Of a stretch of DNA of 64,000 nt, positions 7,880 through 51,404 are shown piece by piece; the stretch's first letter is position 1, and each line of letters starts with the position of its first letter. Both the position numbers and the translations under genes were made by a program. Below the pieces are notes generated by a model. That model was not told the DNA's origin and did no database searches. It saw only the letters and a program-made list of their open reading frames with translations. Where the stretch lies: contig NW_015169174.1 of NCBI RefSeq assembly GCF_001447785.1, positions 585,729-649,728 on the forward strand, given 5' to 3'. Origin of the DNA: Gekko japonicus (taxonomy: Eukaryota).

Positions 7880-9030
7880 GTACCCGTCCGGACGGTACTA
7901 AGAAATCTTACGTACGTTCAGCCTAAGCACCATAATATAGCAGCACCCCTACTCCCAAACTTGGCACTACTCTCCATGCCCGGCCGCGGTGCCTGCGTGG
8001 GCCCAGGGGAAGGGGAAGTGCCGCTCTCCAGTGAGGACACTGTGGGATTTCAGGGGCCAGATCGCGCCAGATCCCAAAGGCCCAGCTCCCCTGTCCGGTA
8101 GGACTGGGGAGGGTCTGGGGCGGGGGGGGGCGTATTTCGGTGTCGCTCACCTGCTCGCTTGCGCGGGTGCCCTGGGGTGGTCGGCCGCTCCCTGCGTTGT
8201 CTCCCCACGCAGCTGCCCATGGCGGCACCCCCAGGCTGCGATTCCAAGGGTTCCTTGCGCCTGAGCCCTGCTCAGGGCTCTCCCGCTCCGCATGGGGCCG
8301 GATCCCCAATCCGCCGTCCGGACAAGCACGCAAACTTTCTGCAGGGCGGCTCCCACCGCCGCCGCCGTCGTCGCCGCCACCACCTCCTCCTCCTCTCAGG
8401 CAGGTTTGGAGTCTTGCGGAACGGGAGGCGTGAATGAGGCGCTGCTGTTTTGATCAGGTTGGATCCAGCCGAGACAGGCCCGGCGACTCCGATGCTCGCT
8501 GCTGCTGATACGGTCGCAGCCCCGCCGAGAGCTGGGCTCTGAGCCGGGGAGGGTCCCCGGCCCCGGGAGACACTTCGGGCTCCTCCTTCTCCAGGTGAGC
8601 ATGTGACTCGGCGGCAGGAGCCCGGCCCCCGCTCCGCCTTCTCTCTGCCAGCCGAGCCCTGGAAGAGGATCGGCCGTGACCCTAGCCACAGTTCTGCAGG
8701 GAGGAGCGGGCGAGACTGAGGGGAGACACGCCGGCCGGCCCGCCGGCCCGCCCCGGGTAGTGGCGGTTGGGGATTAAACGGACCTCAGCACAAAGTTGCC
8801 AACCTCTCTGCCGATTCCGCTCTTCTCGGAACTCTCCACAGGCTCGACCTCAGGCAGGATTTCAGGAAACCAGATTTGCAAGGGCCCAACTGTCCTGGTT
8901 AAAGACGCAAGGGAAGTCGATCGGCCTGACTCCACACAGGGCCCAAGCAATGTAGACTACCGTTGCAAAAGGCAAGGTTGTTGGGGTTCGGAGCCTTTGG
9001 ATTTCGGGGCAGCTCGCCGTGTTGGCAGTG
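7880..9030. promoter_or_regulatory. CpG island / UBTD1 promoter
   Basis: Dense CpG and GC-rich sequence with a (GCC)n-like tract around UBTD1 exon 1; boundaries approximate. Confidence 0.8.
8151..8220 (-). CDS. UBTD1: UBTD1 coding exon 1 (MGSCVGRQRRERPTTPGHPRKRA-G); rest of gene lies left of window
   Basis: Matches recalled human UBTD1 N-terminus MGNCVGRQRRERPAAPGHPRKRAG; GCCGCCATGG Kozak; donor CAG|GTGAG; synteny with MMS19. Confidence 0.93.
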
Positions 9031-12279: not shown

Positions 12280-12930
12280 GTAAAAGCGAGCATTTAAACT
12301 ATGGCGGTAAAACCTCGATCCTCTCCTAATCGGATTTAAACGCCTGCCCTGATTTTTGATAGTCCTATTTACTGCCTCCCGCAGGCCACGCCTCTGCCTA
12401 CGAACTGTACACTCTGCTATTACGGTCCGCCACTACCTTTATCCCTTCGCACGTGACGGAGAGGGTGCGCACGCGCAGTTTGCGCTTCTCCTCCTCTTCC
12501 CCCCCCCCCCTTGTCGTTTTCAGATTATGATGGCGGCTGGAGGGGCTGATGTTGATGCAGGCGCGCCTGGTTCCCAGCTCCAGCCTTGGGAACGGGAAAG
12601 CGCTGCCCGAGAAGCAGCTGAAGGTATGGGCATGCAGAGGACAGGGGAATGGAGCAGACGAAAGTAGAAATCGGCCGGAGACCAGACGGCATGCTACTGC
12701 GGTCTCTGTGGGAAATGAGGTGGGGCTTGCAGGGAAGGAGGTGGCGGCGCAAGGCTCGTCAGAAGACTGATGGGAGTGCGGGAGGTGGGAAAAGCGGAAG
12801 GAAGGCGGAGTTTCGCGAGCCATTGGAAGGCGGGGAGAAGATTTGGGGGGTGGGGTTATACGGGGCGGAAGGCTGGCTCAGATTCGGACTGCGATGGCCA
12901 AGTGTATCATGTAAAGTAATGAAAGCATCG
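12280..12930. promoter_or_regulatory. CpG island / MMS19 promoter
   Basis: CpG-rich; E-box CACGTG 12450-12455; NRF1-like TGCGCACGCGCA 12466-12477; boundaries approximate. Confidence 0.8.
12527..12623 (+). CDS. MMS19: MMS19 exon 1
   Basis: ATGATGGCG... in CpG island; phase-1 donor GAAG|GTATGG compatible with exon 2; peptide divergent from human. Confidence 0.8.
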
Positions 12931-15900
12931 GAGGAGGTACATCTTGCCTTTGCCTGACCACAGAGTGCCACTGTGCCAGCACTATCAAGACACAGCTGGG
13001 AGTGATTAATTAACTATGGCTAGTAACGTGGTTTAGTAGTGAGGGCAGGCACCATTTTAATGGGGTGAGATGTTAGGATGTGATTCATAGCATGAGCAAC
13101 TAGGGGCAAGTTGGGGTTTTTCTTCCTCCTGATGGTTTCAGAGATGATGAGCAAGAATGACATATCAAGGCAGGTATAAAGGTGCTGCTGTGCTCTAGCT
13201 GCTACCTAGAGATGAAAACTGTATGTATGTTGCCTCAGTGTTTTATTCACCAGGATGTGACCAGCAGAGAACTGACATACACAAAATTAGTCCCCTTTGC
13301 CTTGAATAAATTAACTCACTATGGCTTCTGTTCTGTTCAGTTCACGAATACGGTTTTGAATCTCACTTTGACACTGAAAAAACAAAGGAAAAGCCACCCC
13401 TTAAACGTCATCTGAACATAAAAGGTTAAAGGATAATTAACCCATATTTGCGTTCGTCAGTAGTTTCCATCTTGTAAGCTTGTATTTCTGCTCTTTGAAA
13501 CACTGTCCCATTTACTTCCCTAAGAGAGTTACAGGATTACTTTAGGCTCAGATGACTTATTTGTGGTACGGTGACCACTGATGAATTCATCATGGCTTGA
13601 CTGCAACTTGATGGATAACTGTCCTGTTGTATCTAGCCATTTAGTAAAGTGAGCTTTTGCCGTGCTCCTGCTACCCTGTGTTTTCAGTTTGTGGGATCTT
13701 GCTAAGTCTTGTATTGCCAATAGTTAGTCATAGCATCCTGTCACAATGTAAGGTGGGTTTTATCATTCCTCCAGCAACAACTCATTTCCCCAACAACAAC
13801 AGATTGCGTGAGTGCGGTGAAGCTCATCTCACCATCTGGCCAGATATTACAGGCTCTCCTTGCAAGAGCAAGCACTCTATCGTGTCCTTAACAGTCATTT
13901 GAACCCCCTTTTGGCTTAAAAGAAAGTTGGCAGCAGTAACTGGCATCTGGCTAGCTGTTTGAACTGTGAAAAGCTGCCTGAGTGAGCAGCTTCATTTGGA
14001 GTTGGAAACGAAGAGAAAACGCATTGTGATTGTGTGAGCTGGTTTCATAAATGGGTCCATACAATGCGATTTTGAACTTGACTCAGCGGAAAAGTACAGC
14101 TAGTAAAGACCAATACTTGCAAGAAGCTTGCATCATTTTAAATTTCTTTAGTGACTGATTAGGCCCCCAAAAGACCACCAATGTACTAGTATGACACCAC
14201 TAGTCTATATCCTGTGGCTCCACTGCTGAGGGAAATATGTGACAAAAACTCCCCCAACAGGGTGCAACAGAATCCATAGCAACCACACCAGCAGTCACCC
14301 TTCACACCACTCTGTGACAGGTAGAGTGAGACAGCCAGCTGGCGCACTCTCTCTGTTATGCAGCTTGCAGTGATGCAGGAGCTAGACCCAAACGAGAGAA
14401 CTGGCAGCCCCACAGCAGGGCAGCTGGAAGTACACTGGTCATTGCAGGCATTGGTTGTGTGGTAGTCTTGGCAGGTGGTTGGCAATGTACTGTCTCCCCC
14501 GATGGATGGCTGCCTGCAAAGAATCCAAAAATATTCAGGGACAGTTATGGGTAACATTTCACACAGGACACCATGCTGTCAGCAAGATGCCGTGCCAGTG
14601 TAACGCCCTTGCAAGTAGCATGACTACTACACACAGAGCACAACTACTGTGCAGGGTAGATAGCAGCCACTCTGATCTACTGCTGACCAAGCACCCAAGA
14701 TGCCTTACAGAATCACAGCCCCAGTTGCCAGAACAGACACAGTTCCAGTGGAAGACATGGGTAAAGGTTGGCTGTGAGAACCTTCAAGGTACAGGAGGAA
14801 GCTGCAGACCTTGCAGGTGGACCCTATATACAGACTTGCTGCTGGGGTTGCCAGCAGGCCTGTCAGCAACCCTATATGCCAGCATACCCTTCAAGCTCCT
14901 TCCCCTTTTTTTTGCACTGTACCCACTACTAGCAACTGTTGAGGGAGGGAGGGTTGGTTGGGCGATGTACAGAGTAAGTGCAGGGGAGAAGGAGAGTTAT
15001 TGTTGCCACAGTTTAGGGCAACCTACCCTTCCTTGCCTACCTGTGTGGGTTGCATTGTCCTTGCATCCCCACTGGGAAGCATGGAGGCTTCCATTGGATG
15101 TTTGAGATGGAATGCCATTGTGAGACAATGTTGGCTTTTTGTGCAAAGTGCCCTTCTGGGGGGTTCCTATCACCTAAGTCTTTCTGTGGTATTCTGCTTG
15201 ACATGATGCTGTAGCCTCAGGTCATGTGCCCTGTCATCTGAGCTATGGGAGTCCTGGCTGGGGTTTATGTAGTTCACTGAAAGACTGTGGTTGACTGCAG
15301 ATTTAGTTGGTATCCTGACTTACACTGATGTTTGAAGTGGGGGGGGGGGGCTTGAAGGTGAGATGGGAGGAGGACACCTGGATTTTCATTAGCATTGGCC
15401 TCTGTGGGATATTTTAGAGATGTGGCATTGTTTTCAGTGGCATAACATGCTGTCATTAGGGAAGCAGCTGGGACTAGAAAAGTTTAGGAAACTGTCTTAG
15501 CCCCTCTCTGCCTCTGAAAAGCCCCTGACATCACCCCATTCTACACCGGCACGCCAGAATTACACCAGCCTGACACTGGCACACTTGATGCCAGTGCATT
15601 TCTGGCATACACCTGCATAGGATTTAGTTGCTATTCTTACTGTCCATAGGCAGGGCAAAGGATTGTACTGTAAAGGACCTATGGAAATATACATCTGAAG
15701 ACAGGTGAAGTATTGGGTTTGATGTTGAATGCACCATGTGCTGCCTGACTTCTGAATTGTCTTAAAAATACTTATTCCCCCCCCCTTTTTTGCACTGACT
15801 TGTACATAAATTTAATTCCCCCCCCCAGGCAATTACATGGTTGTGTCAGTAAAGAAAAATACATAAATTAGCAAGATCAGGTGGTAGTCAGTTCAAAGGA

Positions 15901-18900
15901 CTGGTGATGAAATAATACAGAAAGCACTACATCCTGTGTGGCTTAGGTTCTTTGAGGTAATCTCAGGGGAGCGGTGGCGCAGGCAGTTAAAACGCCTGCA
16001 CTGTAACATCACCCGAGCAGCCACTATGGCTGTTCGAGTCCCACCGCGGTCGAGGTGAGCTCTCGACCTTCGTCCCAGCTCCCGCCTACCCAGCGGTCTC
16101 GAAAGCAACCTAATTGCAAGTAGGTAAATGGGTACCCACCCTTAGAGGGGTGGGGGGCACCCTGTGTGGTCGGCTGAAAATGGCGGAGATAGTGGAGACG
16201 GCGGCAGTGGCGGCAACGATGGCGGCGGCGGCGGCAATCCTGGCGTGGACGGCATTGGTGGTGCGGCGAGCAAGGCGGCGGCGAGCAAGGCAAGGTGCGC
16301 GTTAGAGCGATCCCTGGCGGCAGAGAAGGAGTACACCGAGGGCTGCCGTGAAGAGAGAAGAAAGGGGCGTGCGAAGATGCCGAGTTCCGGAAAGAAGGCG
16401 GAGCTGCGCGCCTAAGGAGGAGATCGCCACCACTGAACGCCAGAGAACGCCAGAGAAAGAACAACCCGCTGGACCAGGAGACCCGACCATGCCGAGCCAA
16501 CAGAGAAACAGCAATAGCCACCACAGAGGGGGTGCCGGTAGGTTGTCCCACCCACCCCTTCATACATTGTGGCCCTAGCTAGGAACACAGGTGATTAGCA
16601 CCAGAAACCCTGTAAGCCGCTCTGAGACCCTAGCCATGGGACAAGAGCGGGATATCAAGTCTAATGTAAAAAAAAAAGAAAAAAGAGTAAAGTGGAAACA
16701 AAAATTAAGAATGTGGTAGATGTATAAATAGTATTACACAAAAGAAGAGATCTCTTTCTTCAACTAAAGAAGAAGAAGAAGGGGGTAGACGTATAAATAG
16801 TACTTCAGAAAAGAAGAGCTCTTTTTCTTCAACTAAACAAAGAAGAAGGGGACAATTGGCTCAGATGAAACTCTGGAACTCAATACTACTAGATGGTAAC
16901 AAGGCCAAGTACTTAATCAGTGTTAATCACTGTTTCTGATATGATACTGTGCATGTATCATTTGTATTTGTGACAATGCTGTGCTCAGCACCATTATAGC
17001 TACAGCTTTTGCTGACACCCAAGCCTCCGTCCCATACTTTTCCTACCACCAGCTCTCCTGCTCAATCACGTCCTTCACTTGTGTGTCCTGCTCTTGTCTG
17101 CTTGTAGTTGCCTTCAGCCCTTTCCCCAGTGGCACTGGGCAGTGCAAGCAGCAGGGAGCATAAGTGGTAGAGCGCTAGCAAGTGAGTGTGCATTGGAAGC
17201 AGCGGGCCCTGTAGCTGCCCCATCTCAGGGTGTGCTGACGCCAGCCCTTGTGTTATCGGTGCATCCTTTCCTGTGTCCCAATATGCAAGCATTATTTTTT
17301 TTCTGCCTTCTCTCTAAGGCTGTAACAGCCCATTGTTTCTGTACAGGCACAACCTGCTTTGCTAATTGAGTGAACAGTATGCTGATCACAGTTATGTTCC
17401 TCTGAACTATTTAATAGACTGTACCCCTGCACAGGGGAGACAAGACACAGTAGTAAGGAGTTTTGTGATGGAGTACTTTTTTAAATGAAAGCTCTCCATA
17501 GAAAGTACTGGACCAACCTTTAAGTACAGAAAAGGTGTTCTTTGAAAACCAGGAGTGTCATGTTTCCAAGAGGTGTGTTCAGAAAACACATCTTGGAGAT
17601 CGTGTGCTTTTGAGAGTAAGGTAGTGATAAAATGAGTTATAATTGGTTTGTTCATGCTGCTCCTCTAGTTCTCTAACAGCTGTTTGTGCCTGGCTGATGG
17701 GTAGCTGAAGGGCTGCTGTACTGTGCCTATGCAATCCGCCCACTGTTTTGTCTGTTTATATTGTAGGTTGTGCTTTCAGGTGACAAACTGTTTCTTACTT
17801 TCTCTTAGTTTGCTTTCTTTTCCCCACTTCGAATGAGGTAGATTTTATTAACTGCTCAGCAGATAAAAGACATTTACGGTATGCTTCTGTTGTAGTGGGC
17901 ATATTGATGCCCTTTAATTATTTTTCTTGGGTTGCAATTTCTGTACTTAAAGTTGTGATCTACTTAAAATATGGTTTTAAAAAATCTTGTGTAAAACTTG
18001 AGTTTGGAAAAATAATCCAAATTACAGTGATTAAATTCATTTTTGGCATCAGTATTTACTATCACAAAAATAAAAAGTCTATTTCATCTGTTGTATAAAT
18101 TAGGCTCTGGTGCAAAATAAGTAAATGGATGTGGATGGTTGGAGTGTGCTATGTTTACCACTGTAAATGGAAAGCAGGTTATTATGAAAATGTTTTCGGG
18201 GGGGCTTTGCTTGCCTGAGGCTTCTTGACTATCCCAGTCATGCAAATAAAGATACAAAACCATGCAAGCCCATCTAAGATGCATTTCTGCCTGCATGCAT
18301 GGACCTGTGTTTTAAAGGTAGCATGATGATCTGGCGAGCCACTTTCCTTGAAGACAATGCTAATCTCAGGGGAGTAACTAATTGGAAGCTTGGTGTGACC
18401 TGCATGCTGTAGCTGCTTCTGTTTATGGTGCTTAGTTATTTGAATGTGTGATTGGACTGTGGGACACAGGTAAAGTGATCTGCCTGGTATCTTGGAGATG
18501 GGGTAGAAGAATTAGTTGAAAGTCCTCAAATCCCTGCATAGCTCACTCATGTCATTAGACTTTAGAAATAGACATAGATTGCTTCCTTCCTCACCATTCA
18601 TGTGCCCTCTTGCTTGGTTATACTATAATACTATCCCACCTATCTGTCTTCTCCCTTTATAGCCAAGAGTCAGCTGGGATAGTCCTGTATCACTGTTTCC
18701 AGCCTTAAAGGGCCTGAAGAGAGAGCGCATGTTCAAGTTATTATTATTGCTGCAGCACTTATTTTCTGTGGTTAGAAGGAGCGCTGAAGGGTATCCCAGT
18801 TCAGTGGCACATGAGCACATGAAGCTCCCTTATTGGTCTATCCGGGTTAGTGTTGCCTGCTCTGATTGGCAGCAACTCTCTAGTGTCTCAAATGGAGGTC

Positions 18901-21900
18901 TTTCATATCAGCCGCTATCTGATCCTTTAACTGGAGATGCCAGGAATTAAACCTGGGGCCTTCTGCATGCAAAACAGGAAAGGTACCACTGAGCTACAGC
19001 CTTATCAAAGACAGCCAAGAGAGGATTGTAGTGCTCTTTCTTGCTAGGGGCAGCTAACAATTAGGGAGGAGCACGTCACTTTCCCCCTCTTGAGATTGCC
19101 TTGAGATAAATGTTTCTCAACTCATGGTCACATGAAGATTCCTAATACTGAGTCAAGACTATTTGACCTATGTAGCCATTGTTGTCTGCTTCTGACAGCA
19201 GCTCTCCAAGGTCTGAGGTGGAAATCTGTGTAAGCAGGAAGGTGATAAATTGCACTGAGCCTTAAAATACATGTATTCCAATCTCTAAATATTGTTTTAA
19301 GAACTGCTGCCAACTTTAGCGGAGTAAGCTACAGGGCCGAATTTCATCTTGTGTCTTCTTTTTTTAGGAGTGAAAGCTGGGACCTGCACCATATTGGATG
19401 TTGTGGAAACCTTGGGGTAAGTGGAACTTTGTGTGAGATCCCAGCCGATTCATTGTCCCAAGAGAGGACTCCTTGCTTTTCTGTAAAGTTCCCTGTAAAT
19501 AAAATGTTTGAAAAGTGGGGATGCCATGGTCCCTGTGGCTCTGGACTTGATGATGAAAGTAACAGCCCAGATGCTAATATGAATTTCAACTAAATTTTAT
19601 TTATTTATTTATTTATTATTCGATTTATATCCCGCCCTCCCCTACGGCTCAGGGTGGCTAACAATTGGGGCAAAAGCCATAATTAAAACAATTAAAACAA
19701 GATAAAAACATAACAATAGTACAACAAAGTCCTGGTGCTCTGATGTTCCAAGATGGGTTCCGGTAGGGTGGATCCGGACCAACGACGTTAAGTTCCAAAG
19801 CAGCAGATAGCTAGTCTTCTTCCCAGGGCCCGCTTGCACCCTGATGGTATCTCTGCCAAATTTCAGCGATGGTGCTTTGATGGAACAGTAGCAGCGGCGG
19901 CTCCTACTCGAAAGCCTGGCGGAAGAGCTCCATCTTGCAGGCCCTGCGGAACTGTGCAAGATCCCACAGGGCCCGGATCTCCTCCGGGAGCTCATTCCAC
20001 CAGGTAGGAGCCGCCATCGAAAAGGCCCTGGCCCTAGTCTCGGCTAATTTGACATCCCTGAGGTCTGGGGTAGTCAAAAAATGTTGGCCCCCCGACCGTA
20101 GTGCCCTTGGGGGAACATATGGGGAAAGGCGGTTCCTTAGGTATGCCGGACCCTGACCATAAAGGGCTTTAAAGGTAAGAACCAGCAGTTTGAAGCGGAT
20201 CTGGTATGCTATAATCCAAGACATCCTGTTACTTGCTCTCTAGAACTTCCCAGTATGTCCCTAATAGTCTGGGAGGTGAGGTTGCCTCTGTGGCCCACAC
20301 CAGGGTGACCTTGATGAAGAACATAGTGGTACTAGCTCCTCCCTTGAAGAGAGACTTCAGGATTGTTTGGAGGGATAGGCTGTTGGCTGCCTTACATGGT
20401 GGAGCCCAGAATCAGGGCAGCTGAGAGCTCTGAGCCTGGAAACCCCTGGTTCAAATGTTGCCTTCAGGTACAAACCCGCTGGCTTTTCTTGTCATAGGCA
20501 AGAGAAGCGCCTCTGGGGCTTATGGTCCTGTTTAAAATAACAAGGAATTAAGCTCTAATAAGAAAATAGTAGACTGAAGCCAGAATACTGTAATGGTGAT
20601 ATATCTCGGAAAGAGAGGAAAAACTGTGGTAGTAATTTGAAGCATTTCAACATGACTGGGAGTATTCACAGTTGGAAAGGAGAGTACTCCCATCTCCCCA
20701 TCACACTATGCTGCATTTATGTTTTTTACAGCATCAAATATATTTGCCAGTTTTGAATAAATGAGGCAGAGGAGTGACGGGAGCTGCCAAGGAAGTGACT
20801 ACTTTCTCAGCCTCCTTTTCTGACTGCAAGAGGAGGACTGTTACCACTAAAAACATATATTCTTTCCTTTCCTCCCTGCCATAAGGTTGAAGGGCAACAC
20901 TGAAGCCAACACAGGCAGAGCGAAGAAGAGTACTGCTGTCTGCCTTAGACCCTAACAAACACTCTCTCTTCCTTCAAGGGAGCCCAGACATTTTGAAACT
21001 CCACTGGACACTCCTACTAATTTCTAGAAATGCTTATGATCCCTCCCCCTGATTTTGGGGTTCTATATAATTGTAAATGTTTACTAGAGTGGAACTCATG
21101 TCACAGTCCAAGGTTCTTCTGGAACTATATTTCCTTGAATGCACACACACAAATGAAAATGAAATAACCTCTTAAAGATCCACCCTAGGAAAACATTTTT
21201 AATTGCTGAATGTTTTTATACATTTTAAGGTTTTATACATTGCAGAAAAGTGTTCTGGTACTGCACACAATCAACTTTTAGGTGTAAATGTTTTTTAAAA
21301 ACTTCTGCAAATAAATGGTTAGTTTTGAAGGGGTTTTTATTTTGTTTGTTATATTACAGAGAAATGGAATTGCACAATTCTCCCACATAACCACCTCCCA
21401 AATTGAAACACCTGCAAATCTCTCTGTATCTGTGGCCTTTTTAGCATGCAGAGGGTTAGTTTTGAAGGGATTTCTTTTATTCTGTTAGGCTTCTGTGGAA
21501 AGGCAACAAAGAGAAATAATTTCTTTTTAGAAAAGCCATGTATTTACATTTTTAGACTATATAAAAGGAGTAAATATTTTTGTGTGATATCCATGATCAG
21601 GTTTCTGAAAATCTGGAGGTTTTTTGTTGGAAGGCAAGTGTAGTGGAATCTAAGTCATAATAGATTCAAAGAATTAGAGGAGAATTGAGAGGATCCTTGC
21701 ATCTATACTGACGCTCCCCAGCCCAATGTTCCAGACTAAGAGAAATGACAAAAGCAAACGGAGTGAATGAAATGCCTGAGTATGATGCCATTCTTAGCTG
21801 AGCATCAAAGAGTTCTGGTTAAGTGGTTGACTGTTAGGGTTCTTGTTTGTATGCCCTTGTTATAGTGTGTTATATGGCTGATATCACAGGTCAAGTTGTT

Positions 21901-27900: not shown

Positions 27901-30900
27901 TTGTTCGATATTAAGAGAGTCTAAACTCATTACAGTATTGCTCTCAGCTTTGTTGTGCACAAATCCCCTCACCGTGTGAAGGTGTGTGTCCAAGATGGCG
28001 GTTCCCCACCTATCCCCTCCAAAGGAATCGTGACCATTTTAGAGGGTAGTTGTTTCTGATAGATAAGGCATGGCTATGTTCACTTGCTCTGAATCTTGGA
28101 GTTAAATCTGAAACTTCCTGTGCATGTAGTATTCTGAAGCAGAATAAATTCTGTCCTCCATTCACATCATAACTAGACGAATTTTGGATTTTATGTGGAA
28201 TAGTAAGAGATTCAGAGCGTCTCTTAGCAAGAGCAAAAATAAAGGCAGGGAGGGGATATTATGGCATGATGAAGCATTCTGCCTTCTATTTATTTATTTA
28301 TTTATTTGTCTGTCTGTCTGTTACCCTGCCCCCCCCCCCACCGAGGCAGGCTCAGGGCGGCTTACATAAAACCACTAAAACAATATATATCTCAGTATAA
28401 AAGTACATAACAAACAGTTTAAAACCATTAATGTGTCGATGGTGTTATAATGTAATAAAATACATTTAAAAACACAGTCAGCGGTACATATAACACATTC
28501 AGCGGTGCTACTACTCTAGGTGGCCTCTAACTCTAGGTCGGCACAGGGCCCACTGATAAGACACTGCTCCTATCAGAATGCCTGCCAAAAAAGCTCTGTT
28601 TTCACAGCCCTACAGAATTGTGAGAGGTCTCGCAGGGTCCTGATCTTGCTGGGAAGCTCGTTCCAATAGGTCGGAGCTGCCAGAGAAAATGCCCTGGTCC
28701 TGGTCGATGTCAGCCTGGCATCCCTCAGACCAGGGAGGGCCAGGCGGTTTTGTACATATCAGAGCACTGTCCATCCATGCACGTGCCTGCTCGTCTGTAT
28801 GTATAGACATTTGAACTAACTTTTATCTTGATCACCTTTCTGCCAAATGGGTACTTGGGCAATATATAAAATACGAATGAAATTATAAAATACAAGCAAC
28901 AAACAAAAAATAAATATAAAAGCTAGAAGAAAGTGTGCCTATGTTAATGGCTTATTTCTCATCTGTGCGTTTATCTTCTAGTCTCTGCTGCAGCTGGATC
29001 GCCATACAGTCTATAGTATCATCACTAACTTCATGAGCAGCCGAGAGGCAGGTGAGATGGAGAGCTGTGGGAAGGGATTGAGTTGGAAGCAGAGATTCAT
29101 TTTGAGTACCTTGATATCTTCTCTATCTGCTGCTGCTTTCCACAGAACTGAAGAGTCTGGGTGCTGATTTCACCTTTGGCTTCATCCAGGTGATGGATGG
29201 GGAGAAGGACCCTCGCAACCTGTTAGTAGCCTTTCAGATTGTGCGAGACATCATTGTAAAGGGCTATGCACTCGGTAGGTTACTTACTAGGCTGGCTGAC
29301 TGGCTAAGGGGAGAGCCCTGGGTGGCAAATGGTCAGTTGGTTAGGCCTCTTGCCCATGCTTGCTGGGTGTAATATTGGGGTGGAAGGGCAGATCTTGATC
29401 ATGAAATGCCTGTGGAGGCATCTGACATGAGAACTGCTTTCAAGCCCCTGGACTGTTTCTTCACCCAGTTAGTGAGCTGTCATAAGAGTAGCACCAGATG
29501 TTATGGACCCTGGCTGGAGCCTCCATAGGTCCACAGAAGTTCCCAAAGAACCAACACAAGAGATCTGGGTGTACTTACAAGCAGATCTTTAATAACGCAT
29601 CAGAGTTATCAAAGCAGGTTCAGGCTAAGCTATAATCAGCTGGCCTTGAGAGTGCCACACACGGACAGCAAAGCTCGAGAACAAGAGCATAACTCAGACT
29701 AGGTGTCTTATACCCTAAATGCTGGCTGTGAGCCCAAAGAATGATTAATTAAGCTATCCCCAACACTTGGATGAGCCAGGCCATCTTGCACCTGGCTTCC
29801 AGTGGGGGGAAGAAACAACCCAGGCCTTGAAGATAAGCACTGCTAACAAGCACGAGAGGGAAAGTTCCCCTGAGAGCAGCTAATACAGTCCTCTCTCAGG
29901 CCCCAGGGCAACTAAGCACCAGCATGTAGCAAAGATGGAGTCACCTGGGCCAATACGCCTGATGGGCTGCAGATGAATAAGCCAGGTCATACATCTTCTC
30001 AGCTTCCACCCTGTGGTTTAGTTTGGATTTGTAGTATACAGCCTCTGCCCATCCTGAGGACTCACACTGCTGCCGTCTGCCTTTCAGGGCCCTTTGTAGA
30101 GGAGCTGTTTGAGGTGACATCCTGCTACTTCCCTATCGACTTTATTCCTGTGAGTGAGTTCATCTGGTGCTGTCAAACTTCTTTCGTTTCTAGTCATCCC
30201 TCACTGCTGGGCTATAGCTGTTGCAGCAGAATGACTGCTGGTGCCTGGGGCTGAGGGTGTCTGTGATGAGATTTTTTTTCCAGCGAAACACAGCCTGTAA
30301 CAGGGAGGCTTTTAACAAGCAGAGTTTTTAGTCTCTGATTCTGTTTCAGCCTCCAAATGATCCTCACGGAATCCAGAGAGAAGACTTGATTGCCAGCCTG
30401 CGGGCAGTGCTAACCTCCACCCCTGCTTTTGCTGAGGTAGGATAGTTACGTAGAATGGATGAGACCTCTCCTTCACATCTGTCCCGTGGTCTTGTGGGAT
30501 TGCTCTGTTCTTTCTGATGTGAGCCAGTTGTATAGGGTGTGATGTTCATTATTTGATTTGTGTGGACTGCATTCAAAATGTATCAAAAGAAAGATGTGCA
30601 GCTTTCTACAATAACTTGAGATATTTTCAAAAACTGGGAAGATGTCATGGCACCTGAACATAGTATATTATACAGTATGTATACACAGCTAAGATCAAGT
30701 ATATTGTAGAGATAATATACCTTACTTTTGTAACTAGAATCAGCTCCTTTGAAAATGCAGCTATCAGGCCTTGCAAGTTTTTTTGGCTAAGGGTGCAATT
30801 AATATTTTTAAATCACTTTTTCAAAACAGTTTAGAGTTACTGGGATTCTTAAAAGCTCAATAAACTGTCTAAGAATGCTTTGTGGAGGGGTACATGCCCC

Positions 30901-33900
30901 CCCTCGCCCCATAGATTTCAGTGAAGTCCGGAAGTTATAGTATTATCCCTTTCTGTAGGTTATATGTTGTTTGTGGGCCCTGCCTTGATAGGGGTTCTGG
31001 TCTTCTGGGATATATTTTATTTATTTATTTATTTTATGACATTTATACCCCGCCCTCCCCGCGAGCGGGCTCAGGGCAGCTTACATAAGGCACCGAGTGT
31101 GTTCAGTATACAGATTACATGATACAGAATACAGAGTTAAAACAGCTTAAAACAGCTTAAAATCAGTTTTACCACAAAGCACAATGAAGTTTCCATCTTC
31201 TCCCCCCCCCCCCAGTTCCTGCTTCCGCTTCTCATTGAAAAAATGGATTCTGATGTACAAAGTGCCAAGATGGACTCCCTACAGACAATGGTAAGAGCAC
31301 TACTGAAACATAACAAACTCCATAACTGAAGTCAAGGATTGCGTTGTCTTGCCTCTTCAGCTTCCCTCAGGGCCAGGCACACAGGGTTTTTGTCTTCCCC
31401 CGCTTCAGTGTTGGCTTCTCCTTCATGATAATTCAAAGTCTGAGGTCTCTGCCGGCCACAGTAGCTCCTTCACTGGCCACTGAGCCCCTTCCCTTCTTAA
31501 CCCGTTCTTACAGAATGCTGCCTGCATGATCTACGGACAGAAAGAGCTGAAGGATTTCCTCTCTAGCCTCTGGTCATCCTTGCGCAGAGAGGTGAGAGGA
31601 ATGAGTTTTGTACAGGAGGTGGGGTGGGCTTTGTTTTCTGGGCAAGTGTATGTAGCCTTTGTTTCTGCTCTTTGTCTAGAAATGTCATCAAAGGGGCATT
31701 TCGGCATGGCACAGTACCGTGTAGTAACTGNNNNNNNNNNNNNNNNNNNNNNNNNNNNNNNNNNNNNNNNNNNNNNNNNNNCGGTTGTTGCATTCTCTGT
31801 GTAGTTTATATACAAGGCACACTCTTAAGTACAGAGCTGATTCTCCTTCCTTCCCTTCCTCGCCCCCGGGGCCAGGTGTTCCAGACAGCAAGCGAGAGGA
31901 TTGAATCAGAGGGTCTGTCCACTTTGCGTGCTCTCTCAACATGTTTGTCCCGCTCAGTGCTCAGCTCAGATGATGAGGATCTTCTGGATTCTTTCCTTAG
32001 AGGCATTCTGCAGGGTAACCTCCACTGAAGCAGTATACCTTTGACAAGAGATGGTGTGGCGAAGTGGTTAGAGTGTTGAGTTAGGATCTGGATGACCAGG
32101 TTTGAACCCTTGCTCTGCTGTGGAAGCATACTGGGTGACATTGGACCAGTCACACACACTCTCCTAACCTACCTCATAAGGTGGCTGTTGTGAAGATAAA
32201 ATGGAGGAGGGGAGAGCAGTGTTGTAAGCTGCTTTGCATCCCCATTGGGGAGAAAAGCAACATATAAGTACTTAATACAGACTGGACAGCCATTTGACTG
32301 ACACTCCATTCACACAATTCTATTTGGAGTAAATGACAGCCTTGTAGAGGAAGGAGACATCTGCTCTCCTGCTTTAGAGGAAGGAGTGGAAACCACTTCT
32401 GGCGTTAACTTGGGGAAGAAGCAACAGAGAATAGACTCTCTACTAAGCTTTTAAATGCTGAAGATGAACAGCATCTTATTATAGTAAAGTACTGTTGCTT
32501 CTTGGTGGGATTTTAGCAGGGACTTGGGGCTTCTGTTATCTCTCTCATACACGCTCTTGTCTTCTTCAGATTGCAGGCACCACCTGTGTGAGCCTGACAT
32601 GAAGTTGGTGTGGCCGAGTGCAAAGCTCCTGCAGGCGGCTGCAGGGGGTTCCTTGCGGGCCTATTACCAGATCACAAAGAGTGTCTTTCCATTACTGGTG
32701 GAGCAGTATAATAAGCATTTGCAGGTGAGTGGGATGGGCTTGTGCTGGAGTGGAGAGTAATGGCATTGAAACTGGGCAGCCCCAGTTGCAGATTAGGGAA
32801 AGTTTGGTTGCGACTTCTTCTGCATTTGCTTTGGCTTGTGGCCTACATAGAACAGTGATAATGCTGCAATGGTCAAGCTATCTCAAATAAAATAAAATAT
32901 TATCAAAATATATATTTATCCTATGGTGTACACAATGGTGATTAAAAACATAAGATCTGAATATCAGACTGCATAGAACATCAACATGAGCTTTACATAA
33001 GCTGTAGTCGATGATTTCACATACACAGTTGATGAATATATCAAATGATCAACAAGACCACACACATTTCAGCCTCAAGGGCATTCGTCAGTGGTTAGTA
33101 ATATATAGTTATTTCAACAAGACACACATTCAGAAGTGAATATATAAATCCAGACCAGGAGTTGCTTTCTCATATGTTGTGCGGTTGTTGAAAGTTTATA
33201 AAACAGGCCATGGATCCCTTCTCGTGGTAACTGCACTCACACAACAAAATCTTCAATGATATAAACAATCTGGTATAAAATTTCCAGTGCCTCTGGATGT
33301 GTGTGTTGTCCTCAACCGAGAGTTGCAATAAAGTCAGCTACATAGGGCAGTGGCCTTGATCCATGGCTGTTCTTCTGTGCTCTTGACCTGCTTAATCCAG
33401 TTTGTGTCTTCTTAATCTCTTGTAGAGTAGCCAGCATAGGACAATCTTGGAGGTGCTGCTTGGTTTCTTGGAGCTGCGGCAAAAGTGGGGTCATGAGGAA
33501 GAAGGTGCGAGTTGGCTTCCTGTTACATCTGTACTGGTGCCTCGTAACTTCTAGCATAACATTAGTTCCTAGGGCTCGGTAGCCCATTAATACTGCCTTC
33601 TTCTCTCCATCTCCTCCAGATAAGAGTCCCCTGCTTTGCTCTAAAGATGCTCTGTGCTCCATGGTGTTTTCGGCACTTGTTGAACCCAACGTGCAGCTGC
33701 AGTTGGTTGGGATCCGAGCGTTGACCTTTTTAGGATTATTACAAGGTGTGTGGCTCTCTATGTGGATTGAGTGGTGCCCCCAGGAAGTGTTATGTATTAC
33801 TAAAAGATTTCTCTTCTGGTGTGTTTCTGCCTTACTAATACATACTTGCAGTGTGTAGTCTGGCATATTCTACTACATGTATACAGCCAGACAGTTGGAT

Positions 33901-43800: not shown

Positions 43801-43848
43801 NNNNNNNNNNNNNNNNNNNNNNNNNNNNNNNNNNNNNNNNNNNNNNNN
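43801..43848. other. Assembly gap (N run) in ZDHHC16 3' UTR
   Basis: N characters. Confidence 0.99.
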
Positions 43849-47200: not shown

Positions 47201-50021
47201 CAACTCTGCTCAATTTGCATAGCGTATTCATGTTACAGAATTTCTTCCTTATACTTTGCCATCCTTGCATAGTAGGCCGATCTCCTAGCACAAACTGTCG
47301 GTGTATCCAAAAGGACCATGATTGGAGCTCTACTCACAAAGTAGATTTTTTCCCCTCCTCCCTCTTGCCTGTGAAAAGCAACTCCTGGGAGTTGGGGACC
47401 ATCAGGAGCAGTATGGGATTTAACACTGTCTGTAGTGGAAAGGGGAGAATTAGCAAAAATTACCCTCCAACAAGTAGAAGCACCCTTCTGCTTAGGGAAG
47501 AGGGACAGTGGATCCAACCGTATTAACTGATGCTACTGTATTATATAACAGCTGGACCTCTCAAAGGGAGAATCGGATGGATTTATAACTGCAACATTAC
47601 ACGCTTACTTAGTCTTCCTAGTCACATTCTTAACAGAGAACACATATTGCGTGGGCAGCCTGCTAAGCACTTATACCGTACTTCAATTCTAAAGCATAGG
47701 TTGTTCAAAAAAAAAAAAAAAAGATTCAGTCCTGCATTGGAAGAAACTCAAATTTCATGGCCAAAATTAAACAGAATATATTGACTAAAAGGAATATGTC
47801 ACTCTCATTGGGATGCTTTAGTCTGAAGCAAGTTGGAGGAAACTGAAGGGTAAGAGCAGTACAGGAAGGGGAATATGGAAAGAAGAGAAGAGAGATTGGG
47901 TTTATAACCCGCCCTTCACTACCCAAAGGAGTCTCAGAGCGGCTTACAAACTCCTTTCCCTTCCCCTCCCCACAACAGACACCCTGTGAGGTAGGTGGGG
48001 CTGAGAGAGCTCTTGACAGAAACTGCTCTTTTTCAAGAACAGCTGTGCCAGAGTTATGGCTCGCCCAAGGTCATCCAGCAGGTGCAAGTGGAGGAGTGGG
48101 GAATCAAACCCAGTTCTTCCAGATTAGAGTCTGCACACTTAACCACTACACCAAACTGGAAACCAAAAGATTTGTTTAAATCCTTAGCAATGTGTACCAG
48201 ACACATGATTCTACAACAGATTTCATAAAACATGCAGATGTAATTTCACAAGGCAAACCAGCCTAGCTTTCAGCATGCTAATAGATGTTCCAAGAACCCC
48301 TTATGCAGAAATAAGAAATACAACCTGCAGATCCTGTGGGAGGCTCAGTGGTACAGAATTCATCCCAAGCCCACTCCATATAAAAGCACTTCAGGTACTC
48401 ATGCTGGGAAAACTTCTGCCTTGAGACTCTGGAGCCACTGCCTGTCTAAATATACAGTACTGGCTTTGATGGACTGAAGGGCTGGCTCAGAATAAGGCAA
48501 TGCCATATGTTCATATCCAAGGTTCAGATCTAGCTTATCCAAAGATATATGTTCAATTGGTTTTCATATCTGTTTTTAAATTCAGTAGCTGTATTTTGCA
48601 AAGGATTTAAGGTTTGCATATATTTCTCTGAAGTATTTCTACTGAGATTAATGTCGAAGAACAAAACTCACAATACACCAGGGGAGTGAGAAGCATAAGG
48701 ATACCCTCATTCTGACATAGGGAGAACGCCCACCTGTTGCAGATGCTGCAGTGGTGGGTCCTGGCAGGCTTCGGGGCAATACATTTCCTGCAGATGGAGA
48801 CAGCAGCGATGTCACTCCTGGACTGCTAGAGGAAGGAAACAGCAGGGGCTCTTCAGCATTCTGTTGCAAGGATGCTGCCACCTAACACTAACTCAGAACA
48901 AGCTGGAGTCAAGAACACTTGGACCCAGGCATTCCAGAGCCACACATAAGGGCAGCTCCAGGCCAGCCTTTCCCTTTTGTCGTTTTGCAAGGCATGAAAT
49001 GGTGGGAAATCCTGCCAAGCAGCCCTGCTTCAGATATCAGCATAAAAAAGCCCCCCTGAGGCATCAAAGTCCTGCACCCCCTGCTGAAAGAAGAAGAAAA
49101 TTGAGGCCTCAGCTGCCCTACCTGTGGAGGGTAACCAGGCTGAGTAGTGATGGCCATGTAGTAGTGGAAGACAATCATGACGAGGTTCCAGTGGCCATAA
49201 ATGAAATGCCAGAAGATCCAGGGAAGAGGGTAGGTCCGCAGAATGAGTGGCAAGAGGCACACATACACGATGCACACCACTGAGCTGGTCAGAATGATCA
49301 CCAATGCAACAAACACCTGTTTGACAGATCAGGGAAGGGACTAAGTCACTAGCACAGTGTTGCTGGATGAATCCCTTTGATAAAGCTTGCTTGGACACCC
49401 ATTAGCCCCAAAAGCACAACAGCTTTGGGGAGTGGACAAAGGATTATGTGAATCCATCCCATCTCCTCCCACATCTGTATCTCCCCCTTGCTTGGCAGGA
49501 AGGGTTGCAGCTCAGTGAAAAAGCATCTCCTTTGCGTGCAGGAAGTCCCAGATTCAATCCTCAGCATCACAAGAATCAGGAAGTGGGTGATGTGAAAAAC
49601 CTGGCTGAGACCCTGGAAAGCTGCTGCCAGTCAGAGTAAACAATGCTGGCCTTGATCATCTAGGACAGCTTCATGTGTTTCAAGTAGCTACTCAAAATGG
49701 CTGGGGGCAGCATCTCTAAAAGTCAGAGCTGGAACTGCCTCCCATAGACTTTTAGGCTCCGCACCTCTTCCTACAGGTACTTACCACTCCAAACCAACGG
49801 GTGATGTGATCCACCAGCCAGTAGACAGGCTCAAAGAGAGCATCAAGGGCAGTGTCACTATCAATGAAGGAGTTGTACAGCAGAGAGCGCACACACAGAC
49901 GTCCATATAGCCACAGCTGCCACACCTTCTGAGTTGGCCAGAACCGGTGGCGCTGACCTATCCGCAGGCACCTCAGTAAGAGGCGCATGACAGCAGAGAA
50001 TATCCACCGGCGAGTCCTCAT
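44108..50021 (-). CDS. ZDHHC16: ZDHHC16 palmitoyltransferase, coding span; 10 coding exons, 1128 nt, 375 aa
   Basis: Intact DHHC-CRD ([44 protein letters not shown]); exons match recalled human ZDHHC16. Confidence 0.97.
44401..44471 (-). CDS. ZDHHC16: ZDHHC16 coding exon 9 (VFRNPYSYGPLGNWKVFLGVERK)
   Basis: 71 nt; AG/GT flanks; homology. Confidence 0.96.
44766..44889 (-). CDS. ZDHHC16: ZDHHC16 coding exon 8 (SVALALGAL...RGETSIERHIN...KGK)
   Basis: 124 nt; AG/GT flanks; homology. Confidence 0.96.
45109..45194 (-). CDS. ZDHHC16: ZDHHC16 coding exon 7 (TYGQTPPPTFTFHQRAFHKSVVYAWVLC)
   Basis: 86 nt; AG/GT flanks; homology. Confidence 0.95.
45611..45658 (-). CDS. ZDHHC16: ZDHHC16 coding exon 6 (KMKLLAKERLQVTANQ)
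   Basis: 48 nt; homology to KMKQLDKNKLQAVANQ. Confidence 0.92.
45809..45942 (-). CDS. ZDHHC16: ZDHHC16 coding exon 5 ([18 protein letters not shown]...AYAAIE)
   Basis: 134 nt; homology. Confidence 0.96.
45943..46568 (-). other. ZDHHC16: U12-type (minor spliceosome) GT-AG intron in ZDHHC16
   Basis: 5'ss GTATCCTTT; branch CCTTTAAC (45955-45962) ending 12 nt before the exon; no polypyrimidine tract. Confidence 0.9.
46569..46597 (-). CDS. ZDHHC16: ZDHHC16 coding exon 4 (CVLKMDHHC), followed by U12 donor
   Basis: 29 nt; donor GTATCCTT. Confidence 0.95.
47880..48159 (-). mobile_element. Young Squam3-like SINE
   Basis: Reverse complement of 41267-41557. Confidence 0.9.
48335..48513 (+). mobile_element. 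Squam2-like SINE (degenerate)
   Basis: GGCTCAGTGGTA head; family tail ...AAGGCAATGCCATATGTTC. Confidence 0.55.
48734..48822 (-). CDS. ZDHHC16: ZDHHC16 coding exon 3 ([29 protein letters not shown])
   Basis: 89 nt; TAGCAG tandem acceptor. Confidence 0.95.
49122..49316 (-). CDS. ZDHHC16: ZDHHC16 coding exon 2 (VFVALV...PGYPPQ)
   Basis: 195 nt; AG/GT flanks; homology. Confidence 0.96.
49500..49681 (+). mobile_element. Squam2-like SINE
   Basis: Head and CTGAGACCCTGGAAAGCTGCTGCCAGTC body. Confidence 0.65.
49785..50021 (-). CDS. ZDHHC16: ZDHHC16 first coding exon (MRTRRW...FEPVYWLVDHITRWFGV); exon starts at 50037
   Basis: Acceptor CCCCAG just upstream of 50037; donor GTG|GTAAGT. Confidence 0.93.
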
Positions 50022-50966: not shown

Positions 50967-51131
50967 GAAGTAAGAAGGAGACACACATTCCCAAAACCAA
51001 GTTCAGTCATGCATTTTTTTTTGGGGGGGGGGGGGTTAGCCTATCCCCTTGTCCCCTTAAAATGGGACAGTTATCCCATTTAAACCAGTCTACTGTGCCT
51101 GACACGGCCAAAAAGACTCAAATAAGAAGCC

Positions 51132-51404
51132 GAGGAGGGGGAGGAGATTGGATTTATACCCCGCCCTTCACTACCTGAAGGAGTCTCAGAGTGATTTACA
51201 ATCCCTTTTCCTCCCCACAACAGACACTCTGTGAGGGACATAGGGCTGAGAGAGCTCTCTCTGAGAACTGCCCTTGAGAAAACAGCTCTGAAAGAACTTA
51301 TGACCGACACAAGGTCACACCAGCAGCTGCATGTGGAGGAGTGGGGAATCAAACCTGGTTCTCCCAGATTAGAGTTTGAGCCCCTAACCACTACACCAAA
51401 CTGG
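51132..51404 (-). mobile_element. Young Squam3-like SINE
   Basis: Reverse complement of the 41267 family. Confidence 0.88.

What the first reader, a model, noticed from the sequence alone, without database searches (positions are those of the whole stretch)
15966..16684. Chimeric cargo-carrying SINE: Sauria head + GC-rich unique middle + L2-type tail
Seen: 15966-16136 has Pol III A/B boxes and aligns by eye to the Sauria SINE at 57851-58185 (CCCAGCTCCCGCCTACCCAGCGG...TGCAAGTAGGTAAATGGGTACC). Homology then breaks into ~475 bp of CpG-rich sequence. The element ends with TGTAAGCCGCTCTGAGAC...GCGGGATAT, the tail motif shared with the Squam3-like SINE and L2 copies in this window, plus an A-tail. 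The plus strand has no T-run of 3 or more over ~720 nt, compatible with one Pol III transcript, and CpGs are intact, suggesting a young insertion. Known: Sauria SINEs normally end in a BovB-derived (ACCTTT)n tail. Inference: a long SINE family that switched partner LINE from RTE to L2 and carries a cargo module; possibly undescribed. No TSD was found.
Basis: partly seen in the sequence, partly recalled or inferred. Interest (0 to 1): 0.78.

Follow-up and report, generated by a model that had tools for sequence, protein, structure and literature searches.

The report
Long composite SINE copy, gecko-type genome
This 719-base insert is one copy of a repeated, fairly young mobile element that joins a Sauria-SINE-like front end to a variable CpG-rich middle and an L2-type rear end; it looks like a new SINE family, not a new kind of element.

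Summary
15966-16684 (+) has a Sauria-like head, a CpG-rich middle (CpG o/e 0.82 against 0.04-0.17 in the flanks) and a stem-loop tail whose 18-nt motif also occurs exactly in two Squam3-like SINEs of the window.

It is not a one-off. About 1.9 Gb of raw genomic reads from the same species cover the flanks 0-2 deep. They cover the head about 2,400 deep, the middle 100-177 deep and the 3' part about 250-265 deep. So every module is repeated. The head is shared by ten to twenty times more elements than this particular middle.

Many relatives diverge in sequence right after 16163, and copies differ by 9-nt and 34-nt repeat-unit indels. Most other copies read T at 16671 and about half at 16675, which points to a (TAAA)n tail.

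No TSD was found. The lack of T-runs is no more than the T-poor composition predicts: 21% of shuffles also lack them.

Family sequences occur in two RNA runs, about ten times more per DNA copy than the head-only relatives.

Seven paper searches found no description. Dfam and Repbase could not be searched.

The scan's first readers noted the same architecture on other pieces of this genome: 28 notes match my word search.

Verdict: a real, multi-copy composite SINE-like family. Pol III transcription and mobilisation by an L2 LINE are inferred, not shown.

The parts
15966..16684 (+). Whole element, 719 nt
   Evidence: The limits are set by read depth: 0 in the bins up to 15929, rising at 15966/7, and falling to about 4 after 16677. 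567 genomic reads have loose, unlike, A-rich ends just before 15967.
15966..16047 (+). tRNA-related head, with an A-box-like site at 15975-15985 and a B-box-like site at 16032-16041
   Evidence: Read directly. The 5' end is shared with the Sauria-type copy. ARAGORN finds no tRNA. Genomic depth 1,160-2,400.
16048..16068 (+). 8-bp hairpin GGTCGAGG/TCTCGACC
   Evidence: Folds at -12.3 kcal/mol. Among reads of other copies the paired places change together in frequency: 16050 T>C 54% with 16066 A>G 58%, and 16053 A>G 63% with 16063 T>C 62%. This looks compensatory, but the changes are not phased read by read.
16056..16137 (+). Segment homologous to the Sauria SINE body
   Evidence: 74% over 81 nt to 58027-58103 (-), E 6e-06. 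Alignment.
16138..16162 (+). G-rich segment shared by several hundred elements, ahead of the point where copies diverge
   Evidence: Depth 1,111 in bin 16106-16149 and 465 in bin 16150-16193. 523 genomic reads run on unlike this copy after 16163/16164.
16163..16501 (+). Variable CpG-rich, T-poor body; this version has about 100-177 copies
   Evidence: - Depth 100-177.
- CpG o/e 1.07-1.08 in 300-nt windows.
- Short tandem repeats at 16199-16245, 16263-16291 and 16435-16457.
- Other copies carry an extra 9 nt at 16436 (49 of 163 reads) and an extra 34 nt at 16387-16390.
- No Pfam family reaches its cut-off for the 4 ORFs tested.
16502..16610 (+). 3' body shared by more copies than the middle; loosely resembles the LINE-derived region of the Squam3-like SINEs
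   Evidence: Depth 249-265. CCCACCCACC...TTGTGG aligns with the Squam3-like copies.
16611..16662 (+). L2-type terminal stem-loop (CCGCTCT / AGAGCGG)
   Evidence: Exact 18-nt motif shared with 41484 and 47931. The same fold appears in 5 of the 6 other tails compared. Aligns with the end of the LINE fragment at 19590-19720 (-).
16663..16684 (+). A-rich tail; (TAAA)n in most other copies
   Evidence: Other copies read T at 16671 (68 of 106 reads) and at 16675 (14 of 32 reads). Depth falls after 16677.

Best explanation
The insert is one moderately young copy of a repeated, non-autonomous retroposon family built from modules:
- a tRNA-related head and first body segment homologous to Sauria/Squam1 SINEs;
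- a G-rich, CpG-rich, T-poor central region that differs strongly between subfamilies and varies by repeat-unit indels;
- a 3' region ending in the stem-loop and (TAAA)n-type tail of L2-clade LINEs.

The likely mechanism is inferred, not shown. The internal A and B boxes would drive Pol III from the first base. The T-poor body would let the polymerase read through to the first T5 run, at 16822 in the flank. The L2 reverse transcriptase would recognise the 3' stem-loop and copy the RNA into a new site, usually without a target-site duplication.

Shown: the anatomy, the repetition of every module, the variable middle, and the presence of family sequence in RNA. Inferred: Pol III transcription, the L2 partnership and the direction of the tail swap.
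For: - Every module is repeated. Flanks are 0-2 deep, the head about 2,400, the middle 100-177, the 3' body 249-265 and the tail bin 142, in about 1.93 Gb of raw genomic reads of the same species.
- Pieces of another sample's contigs cross the module borders: 16141-16260 and 16535-16648 (table 8).
- All 20 runs that hold part of the stretch, from 8 studies, carry one species label.
- The head is homologous to the Sauria-type copy.
- The tail motif and fold are shared with Squam3-like SINEs, and with a LINE fragment that has an ORF end, a 3' UTR and a (TAAA)n tail.
- Section 6 of PMC7983390 says that the Squam3 3' region resembles the 3' terminus of L2-clade LINEs, that its tails are largely (TAAA)n or (CTT)n, and that TSDs are very rare. 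This fits the missing TSD here.
- RNA runs X21 and X23 cover the element at 36-213 and 5-43, and the 5' flank at 0 (the 3' flank at up to about 1.8 in X21). The RNA-to-DNA depth ratio is about 0.5-0.7 in the middle against about 0.05 in the head.
- 28 first-reader notes on other pieces of this genome match my word search, and the listed titles describe the same architecture. These are unchecked leads.
Against: - No other full copy could be read, so linkage of head, middle and tail within the same copies rests on continuous depth, a few short contig pieces and unchecked notes.
- In the middle, RNA reads are skewed 2-3 to 1 towards first mate on the + strand, in both RNA runs. In a library of the commonest stranded type this would mean RNA antisense to the element, which does not fit simple Pol III sense transcription. 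The library type is unknown.
- At 719 nt the element is about twice the 190-350 nt given for the described squamate SINEs (PMC10702118, Results passage seen).
- The absence of T-runs carries no weight beyond base composition.
- No tRNA or Rfam model matches the head.
- The LINE fragment at 19.6-20.3 kb could not be assigned to the L2 clade by any tool.
Confidence: 0.75

Rival explanations
1. An SVA-like composite retroposon transcribed by Pol II. On this view the CpG-rich variable middle acts as a portable CpG island or promoter, possibly antisense, and the SINE head is only a structural module.
For: - CpG o/e in the middle is 0.82-1.08, as high as the three other CpG-rich stretches of the window, which may be promoter CpG islands.
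- RNA depth per DNA copy is about ten times higher in the middle than in the head, and is strand-skewed only in the middle.
- Length and sequence vary between copies, with repeat-unit indels.
Against: - Tandem repeats cover only about 98 of the 474 nt of the middle, so it is not a true VNTR array.
- The A and B boxes sit at the distance from the 5' end expected for a Pol III unit.
- The family's 5' end is sharp at 15966/7.
- There are no TSDs, and most copies have a (TAAA)n tail rather than poly(A), so it is not L1-type like SVA.
Confidence: 0.12
2. The middle was captured from another repeated or expressed source, such as an rDNA spacer, the first exon of a gene family, or the 5' part of a LINE. 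Much of its DNA depth and RNA signal would then come from that source and not from SINE copies, so the true long-SINE family would be smaller.
For: - The depth of the middle, 100-177, is in the range of rDNA copy numbers (recalled).
- The RNA-to-DNA ratio is higher in the middle than in the head.
- The middle starts like a first exon, with an ATG in GC-rich context at 16180.
Against: - Depth never falls to flank level between modules.
- No high-agreement loose ends are listed at the borders of the middle in the RNA runs, where 32 or more reads would have been shown. RNA reads instead run on into head-like sequence at 16119.
- Rfam gives no rRNA or other match.
- No protein family or homologue was found.
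- Several sequence variants of the 34-nt insertion occur both in DNA and in RNA, so many loci are involved (table 5c).
Confidence: 0.08
3. A single-locus chimera: independent nested insertions, or a one-off template-switch retrocopy.
For: Within the 64-kb window there is no second copy, and no TSD was found.
Against: All three modules are 100- to 2,400-fold over-represented in genomic reads relative to the flanks. The majority-variant places show that this copy differs from a shared family sequence.
Confidence: 0.03

Closest known systems
Sauria (Squam1) SINE
   Same: - The 5' terminus and the first body segment (16056-16137) are homologous to the Sauria-type copy in the window.
- Both have a tRNA-related head with A and B boxes.
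- Both have a hairpin at the same place after the B box.
   Different: - It lacks the Sauria 3' half and the (ACCTTT)n tail seen at 57851. PMC13295347 (Introduction passage) says Sauria SINEs share part of their 3' end with Bov-B LINEs.
- It is twice as long.
- It has a CpG-rich variable middle and an L2-type end.
Squam3 SINE (Ther1/CORE-derived, L2-dependent)
   Same: - The terminal stem-loop is shared, with 18 of 18 nt of the motif.
- A (TAAA)n-type tail in most copies and no TSD. Section 6 of PMC7983390 reports tails largely (TAAA)n or (CTT)n and a very low rate of TSDs.
   Different: - The head and body are unrelated. blastn finds only the 18-nt motif.
- No CORE segment was recognised.
- Squam3 is 218-271 nt long.
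Hominoid VNTR composite retrotransposons (SVA, LAVA, PVA, FVA)
   Same: A composite non-autonomous retroposon with a SINE-derived 5' module, a GC-rich central region that varies in length, and a different 3' module. It is young and present in RNA.
   Different: - The SVA group has a true VNTR array, is mobilised by L1 (abstracts of PMC3287187 and PMC7353768, seen in the listing), and carries TSDs and poly(A) (recalled). The abstract of PMC4432496 (same listing) calls the group specific to hominoid primates.
- Here tandem repeats are a minor part of the middle, the end is L2-type and no TSD is present.
Anolis SINE2 and other tRNA-headed, L2-tailed lizard SINEs (recalled, not checked by any search)
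   Same: A tRNA-type head combined with an L2-type 3' stem-loop and an AT-rich microsatellite tail.
   Different: I could not compare sequences. From recall these are short elements without a long CpG-rich variable body.

Membership tests
SINE (tRNA-derived, LINE-dependent) | Internal Pol III promoter (A and B boxes) in a head derived from a small RNA | tested here: inconclusive
   Box-like motifs lie at 15975-15985 and 16032-16041, 57 nt apart, with the A box 9 nt from the 5' end (the consensus used is recalled). No tRNA is called by ARAGORN or Rfam.
SINE (tRNA-derived, LINE-dependent) | Dispersed, multi-copy | tested here: met
   Depth is 100-2,400 over the element against 0-2 in the flanks. 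The 5' flanks of other copies are heterogeneous: the loose-end consensus has agreement 0.33 over 567 reads.
SINE (tRNA-derived, LINE-dependent) | 3' region derived from a partner LINE, plus a simple-repeat tail | tested here: met
   The stem-loop and tail align with the 3' end of a LINE fragment that has an ORF end, at 19590-20300 (-), and with L2-type ends at 28.3 and 31.0 kb. The clade of that LINE was not confirmed by a tool.
SINE (tRNA-derived, LINE-dependent) | Short length (described squamate families are 190-350 nt) | tested here: not met
   The element is 719 nt. The range is from the Results of PMC10702118 (passage seen).
SINE (tRNA-derived, LINE-dependent) | Transcribed by Pol III and mobilised in trans by the LINE | not testable with these tools
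   RNA-seq reads cover the family, but they show neither which polymerase makes the RNA nor where it starts.
Sauria / Squam1 SINE | Bov-B-derived 3' end with an (ACCTTT)n tail | tested here: not met
   Homology to the window's Sauria-type copy stops at about 16137. The tail is L2-type and A-rich.
Sauria / Squam1 SINE | Sauria head and proximal body | tested here: met
   74% over 81 nt, plus the shared 5' terminus. The comparison was with one genomic copy, not with a consensus.
Squam3 SINE | Squam3 tRNA-derived head and CORE-like central domain | tested here: not met
   blastn of the element against the window, which holds three Squam3-like copies, finds only the 18-nt tail motif.
VNTR composite retrotransposon (SVA-like) | Central array of tandem repeats whose unit number varies | tested here: inconclusive
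   TRF rows cover about 98 of 474 nt, with at most 2.3 copies per unit apart from a (CGG)12 run. Copies do differ by 9-nt and 34-nt repeat-unit insertions.
VNTR composite retrotransposon (SVA-like) | L1-type insertion marks (TSD and poly(A)) | tested here: not met
   No TSD of 6 nt or more. T at 16671 in most other copies (68 of 106 reads) and at 16675 in about half (14 of 32) fits a (TAAA)n tail.

The most novel reading that the evidence does not exclude
Geckos may carry an L2-mobilised counterpart of the hominoid SVA-type composites. This would be a Pol III-headed retroposon whose hypervariable, CpG-island-like centre spreads unmethylated, transcriptionally active (perhaps antisense) CpG-rich DNA into introns and changes by repeat-unit gain and loss as it amplifies. 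It would be the first such composite outside primates and the first that depends on L2 rather than L1.
Probability: 0.15. Interest if true: 0.7.

Novelty: new member of a known kind. Interest (0 to 1): 0.45.

Why it matters
If the family is truly undescribed, it adds a fourth major SINE lineage to the three usually treated in squamates (Sauria/Squam1, Squam2, Squam3). It would also be a clear natural case of module shuffling: a Sauria front end revived on an L2 rear end.

Its youth, intact CpGs and presence in RNA would make it useful in three ways:
- as an insertion marker for gecko phylogeny and population work;
- as a test case for how L2 enzymes choose their templates;
- as a way to ask whether a mobile CpG-rich block alters methylation or transcription of host introns. 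Here it lies about 3.4 kb downstream of a CpG-rich, promoter-like stretch.

For genome annotation it matters in a plain way. Such copies can be mistaken for CpG islands or first exons.

Tried and rejected
- tRNA and RNA-family scans of the element found nothing. ARAGORN gave 0 genes. Rfam at E up to 1 gave only two chance miRNA-like matches, both outside the element at 17074-17168.
- A coding origin for the middle was not supported. Four ORFs, including a 179-aa frame on the - strand, gave no Pfam family above its cut-off; there were two weak low-complexity matches at E about 0.006. The 179-aa frame had 201 word candidates and none at E 0.001 or better among the 5.8 billion proteins. I take the long - strand frame to be a by-product of the A-poor - strand.
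- I considered a long-range stem around the middle, formed by the inverted repeats 16146-16160/16545-16559 and 16160-16170/16520-16530. Its pairing probability is only 0.04-0.13 in the ensemble, so I dropped it as a feature.
- The absence of T-runs as a Pol III signature is not significant.
- The TSD search found nothing.
- I looked for more copies in the window. Sensitive blastn found none. The other CpG-rich stretches (7.9-9.0, 12.3-13.0 and 52.8-54.1 kb) were read where needed: I looked at 12.2-13.15 kb and 52.7-54.5 kb and saw no SINE-like structure. The 7.9-9.0 kb stretch was not read.
- A metagenome-contig scan with a 21-nt stretch of the conserved segment gave 0 matches. That was expected for an animal repeat and says nothing.
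- I tried to name the LINE fragment at 19.6-20.3 kb. Pfam found nothing. The protein atlas returned only unnamed chordate clusters at 0.92-0.93.
- Literature: seven counted searches turned up no ~700-nt Sauria-head/L2-tail SINE. I read passages of PMC10702118, the outline and sections 3 and 6 of PMC7983390, and passages of PMC13295347. The other papers I saw only as listings and abstract openings. Supplements were not opened, and those of PMC10702118 and PMC7983390 might hold consensus sequences that bear on this. Dfam, Repbase and SINEBase could not be queried.
- Whether 15966-16684 lies in an intron of the gene that ends at 41590 was not tested. My translation of a possible first exon was out of frame, and I did not pursue it.
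Full report
**What is there.**
- It starts GGGGAGCGGTGGCGCAG. An A-box-like site lies at 15975-15985 and a B-box-like GTTCGAGTCC at 16032-16041.
- Its 5' terminus and the segment 16056-16136 align with the Sauria-type SINE copy that lies on the - strand at 57851-58190. blastn gives 74% over 81 nt, E 6e-06; the MAFFT alignment is.
- That copy ends in the (ACCTTT)n-type tail. PMC10702118 lists (AC2T3)n among squamate SINE tails.
- Similarity stops after GGTACC at about 16137.
- The next ~474 nt are G+C 0.63 with CpG observed/expected 0.82. The flanks have 0.04 and 0.17 and the whole window 0.24.
- The end carries TGTAAGCCGCTCTGAGAC...AGAGCGGGATAT, followed by an A-rich run.

**Is it more than chance?**
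- The 18-nt tail motif occurs six times in the window at up to 3 mismatches, against 0.07 expected. The matches are the element, three Squam3-like SINEs (41.4, 47.9 and 51.1 kb) and two ends with (TAAA)n-type tails (28.3 and 31.0 kb).
- Five of the six other tails compared (four, the LINE-fragment end) share the design: a 7-bp stem around a small inner hairpin, then ATA(T/A)AA.
- A 5'-truncated LINE fragment at about 19610-20300 (-) has the end of an open reading frame, about 250 nt of 3' UTR, the same kind of stem-loop and a (TAAA)n tail. I recognise its C-terminal peptide as L2-like from memory only. Pfam and the protein atlas did not name it.
- Section 6 of PMC7983390 states that the Squam3 3' region resembles the 3' terminus of L2-clade LINEs, that its tails are largely (TAAA)n or (CTT)n, and that TSDs are very rare.
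- The lack of T-runs is real but carries no weight. T makes up 13.6% of the element, and 21% of dinucleotide shuffles also lack TTT while 87% lack TTTT.
- No TSD of 6 nt or more exists.

The run search found 20 runs from 8 studies that hold part of the stretch, all under one coded species. I laid window:15666-16984 with one raw genomic run (X22), two raw RNA runs (X21, X23) and one set of contigs from another sample (X2), at 80% likeness. About 1.93 Gb of X22 was read. Summed over both directions, the depths were:

| Region | X22 genomic depth |
|---|---|
| Unique flanks | 0 to about 2 |
| 15974-16017 | 1,160 |
| 16018-16105 | 2,175-2,406 |
| 16106-16149 | 1,111 |
| 16150-16193 | 465 |
| 16194-16501 | 100-177 |
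| 16502-16633 | 249-265 |
| 16634-16677 | 142 |
| After 16677 | about 4 |

- With flank depth near 1, these figures are rough copy numbers at 80% likeness or better: thousands for the head, hundreds for the 3' body, and one to two hundred for this version of the middle.
- The family's 5' edge is sharp. 567 reads have unlike, A-rich, heterogeneous sequence just before 15967 (agreement 0.33), as expected for dispersed insertions.
- Contig pieces of X2 cross 16141-16260 and 16535-16648.
- A piece without differences covers 15876-15994. So the insertion is probably present in that second sample too, although only 29 nt of that piece lie inside the element.
- No read or contig skips the whole element, so I saw no empty allele. 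Flank coverage was too thin to exclude one.

**How the copies differ (all).**
- About 1,200 genomic reads stop matching after 16096/7. These are older or more distant head relatives.
- 523 reads stop matching after 16163/4 and run on into other G-rich sequences. The region after 16163 is therefore where subfamilies diverge.
- Within this copy's subfamily, 49 of 163 reads carry one more 9-nt unit at 16436, inside the (GAACGCCAGA)2.3 repeat found by TRF.
- About a third of reads carry a 34-nt insertion at 16387-16390 that repeats CCGGAAAG. It occurs in several sequence variants in both DNA and RNA.
- TRF rows cover about 98 of the 474 nt of the middle. The middle is repeat-prone but not a true VNTR array.
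- At 16179, 16193, 16304, 16322, 16374, 16395 and 16502, 83-99% of the reads differ from this copy. At three of these (16193, 16322, 16502) the majority reading would restore a CpG. This copy is therefore some 2% or more from its family sequence: young, not brand new.
- Other copies read T at 16671 (68 of 106 reads) and at 16675 (14 of 32 reads). With the neighbouring bases this gives GTAAATAAAT, so the usual tail is probably (TAAA)n and this copy's A-run is the odd one.
- In the 16048-16068 hairpin, the paired places 16050/16066 and 16053/16063 change in matching proportions (54%/58% and 63%/62%), from U-A and A-U to C-G and G-C. This looks compensatory but is not phased.

**RNA.**
- Both RNA runs cover the element, X21 at 36-213 and X23 at 5-43. 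The 5' flank is at 0; the 3' flank at up to about 1.8 in X21.
- The RNA-to-DNA depth ratio is about 0.05 over the head, which is shared with thousands of relatives, and about 0.5-0.7 over the middle. Per copy, the long family is therefore about ten times better represented in RNA than its head-only relatives in the same libraries.
- This supports transcription of the family. It says nothing about the polymerase or the start site.
- In 16194-16457 the reads are skewed 2-3 to 1 towards first mate on +, in both RNA runs, while DNA is 1 to 1.
- If the libraries are of the commonest stranded type, the excess RNA is antisense to the element. The only control I had, two or three flank reads, is too thin to settle this. 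I leave it as an unexplained point against a simple Pol III picture.

**What it is not.**
- No tRNA gene and no Rfam family match.
- None of the 4 ORFs tested reaches a Pfam cut-off.
- The 179-aa frame on the - strand has no relatives among 5.8 billion proteins. It is best explained by the A-poor - strand.
- The inverted repeats that bracket the middle have low pairing probability.
- Of the other CpG-rich blocks of the window, the two I read (12.3-13.0 and 52.8-54.1 kb) look like gene promoters, not copies; 7.9-9.0 kb was not read.

**Comparison with the known.**
- The papers I could read treat three squamate SINE families, Sauria/Squam1, Squam2 and Squam3, of about 190-350 nt (PMC10702118, passages; PMC7983390, sections 3 and 6).
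- The element fails the Sauria test at the 3' end and the Squam3 test at the head and core. It passes the general SINE tests except length, and its mode of transcription is unknown.
- Replacing the LINE-recognised end is a known way for a SINE to be revived (PMC7983390, Background).
- The nearest functional analogy for a SINE-derived front, a variable GC-rich centre and a foreign rear is the hominoid SVA group. Those have a real VNTR array and are mobilised by L1 (abstracts seen in the listing) and carry TSDs and poly(A) (recalled), none of which is met here.
- Seven paper searches, one of them for the motifs as letter strings, found no description.
- Dfam, Repbase and SINEBase were out of reach, and supplements were closed. 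I put perhaps four chances in ten on an automatic library already holding a consensus.

**Earlier notes of this scan.** 28 first-reader notes on other pieces of the same genome match my word search, and the titles listed describe the same architecture, with lengths mostly 588-738 and some windows holding three copies. They are unchecked AI notes and not independent evidence. Their number does fit the depth-based copy estimate. No second-stage result was visible.

**Verdict.** A real, repeated, fairly young composite SINE-like family: Sauria-type head, variable CpG-rich body, L2-type end. It is most likely an undescribed family of a known kind. The one-off reading is refuted. The 'cargo' idea and the Pol III and L2 mechanism remain inferences.

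Noticed in passing
window 16700-16851: Directly after the element's tail lies a 69-nt unit repeated 2.2 times (82% matches). It is not part of the family: read depth there is about 1-15.
   Followed up: partly
window 19610-20300 (-): A 5'-truncated LINE fragment. It has the end of an ORF (106 aa from 20224, stop at 19904-19906), about 250 nt of 3' UTR, a stem-loop like the element's and a (TAAA)n tail. It looks L2-like from memory. Pfam found nothing and the protein atlas gave only unnamed chordate clusters.
   Followed up: partly
window 41262-41556 (+), 47897-48155 (-), about 51130-51400 (-): Three Squam3-like SINEs with (CTT)n-type tails. The length and tail of the first two fit the 3B/3B3 subfamilies tabulated for gekkonid geckos in PMC7983390.
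   Followed up: partly
window 41564-41590 (+): The end of a coding exon translates FLLGTPGR*, right after the (CTT)n tail of the Squam3-like SINE. I did not verify the gene name with a tool.
   Followed up: partly
window 7901-9000, 12301-13000, 52801-54100: Three other CpG-rich blocks (CpG o/e 0.65-1.0). The two I read (12.3-13.0 and 52.8-54.1 kb) look like gene promoters or first exons. The one at 12.3-13.0 kb lies 3.4 kb upstream of the element on the same strand.
   Followed up: no
window 28290-28369 (-), 31020-31088 (-): Two further L2-type 3' ends with the tail stem-loop and (TAAA)n or (GACA)n(TAAA)n tails, without a nearby reverse-transcriptase ORF.
   Followed up: partly
window 16194-16457: RNA reads of two runs are skewed 2-3 to 1 towards first mate on the + strand only over the CpG-rich middle. 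Head, 3' part and DNA are balanced. This hints at a separate, possibly antisense, transcript class.
   Followed up: no
window 31731-31781, 43801-43848: Two runs of N (51 and 48 letters). Left as they are.
   Followed up: no
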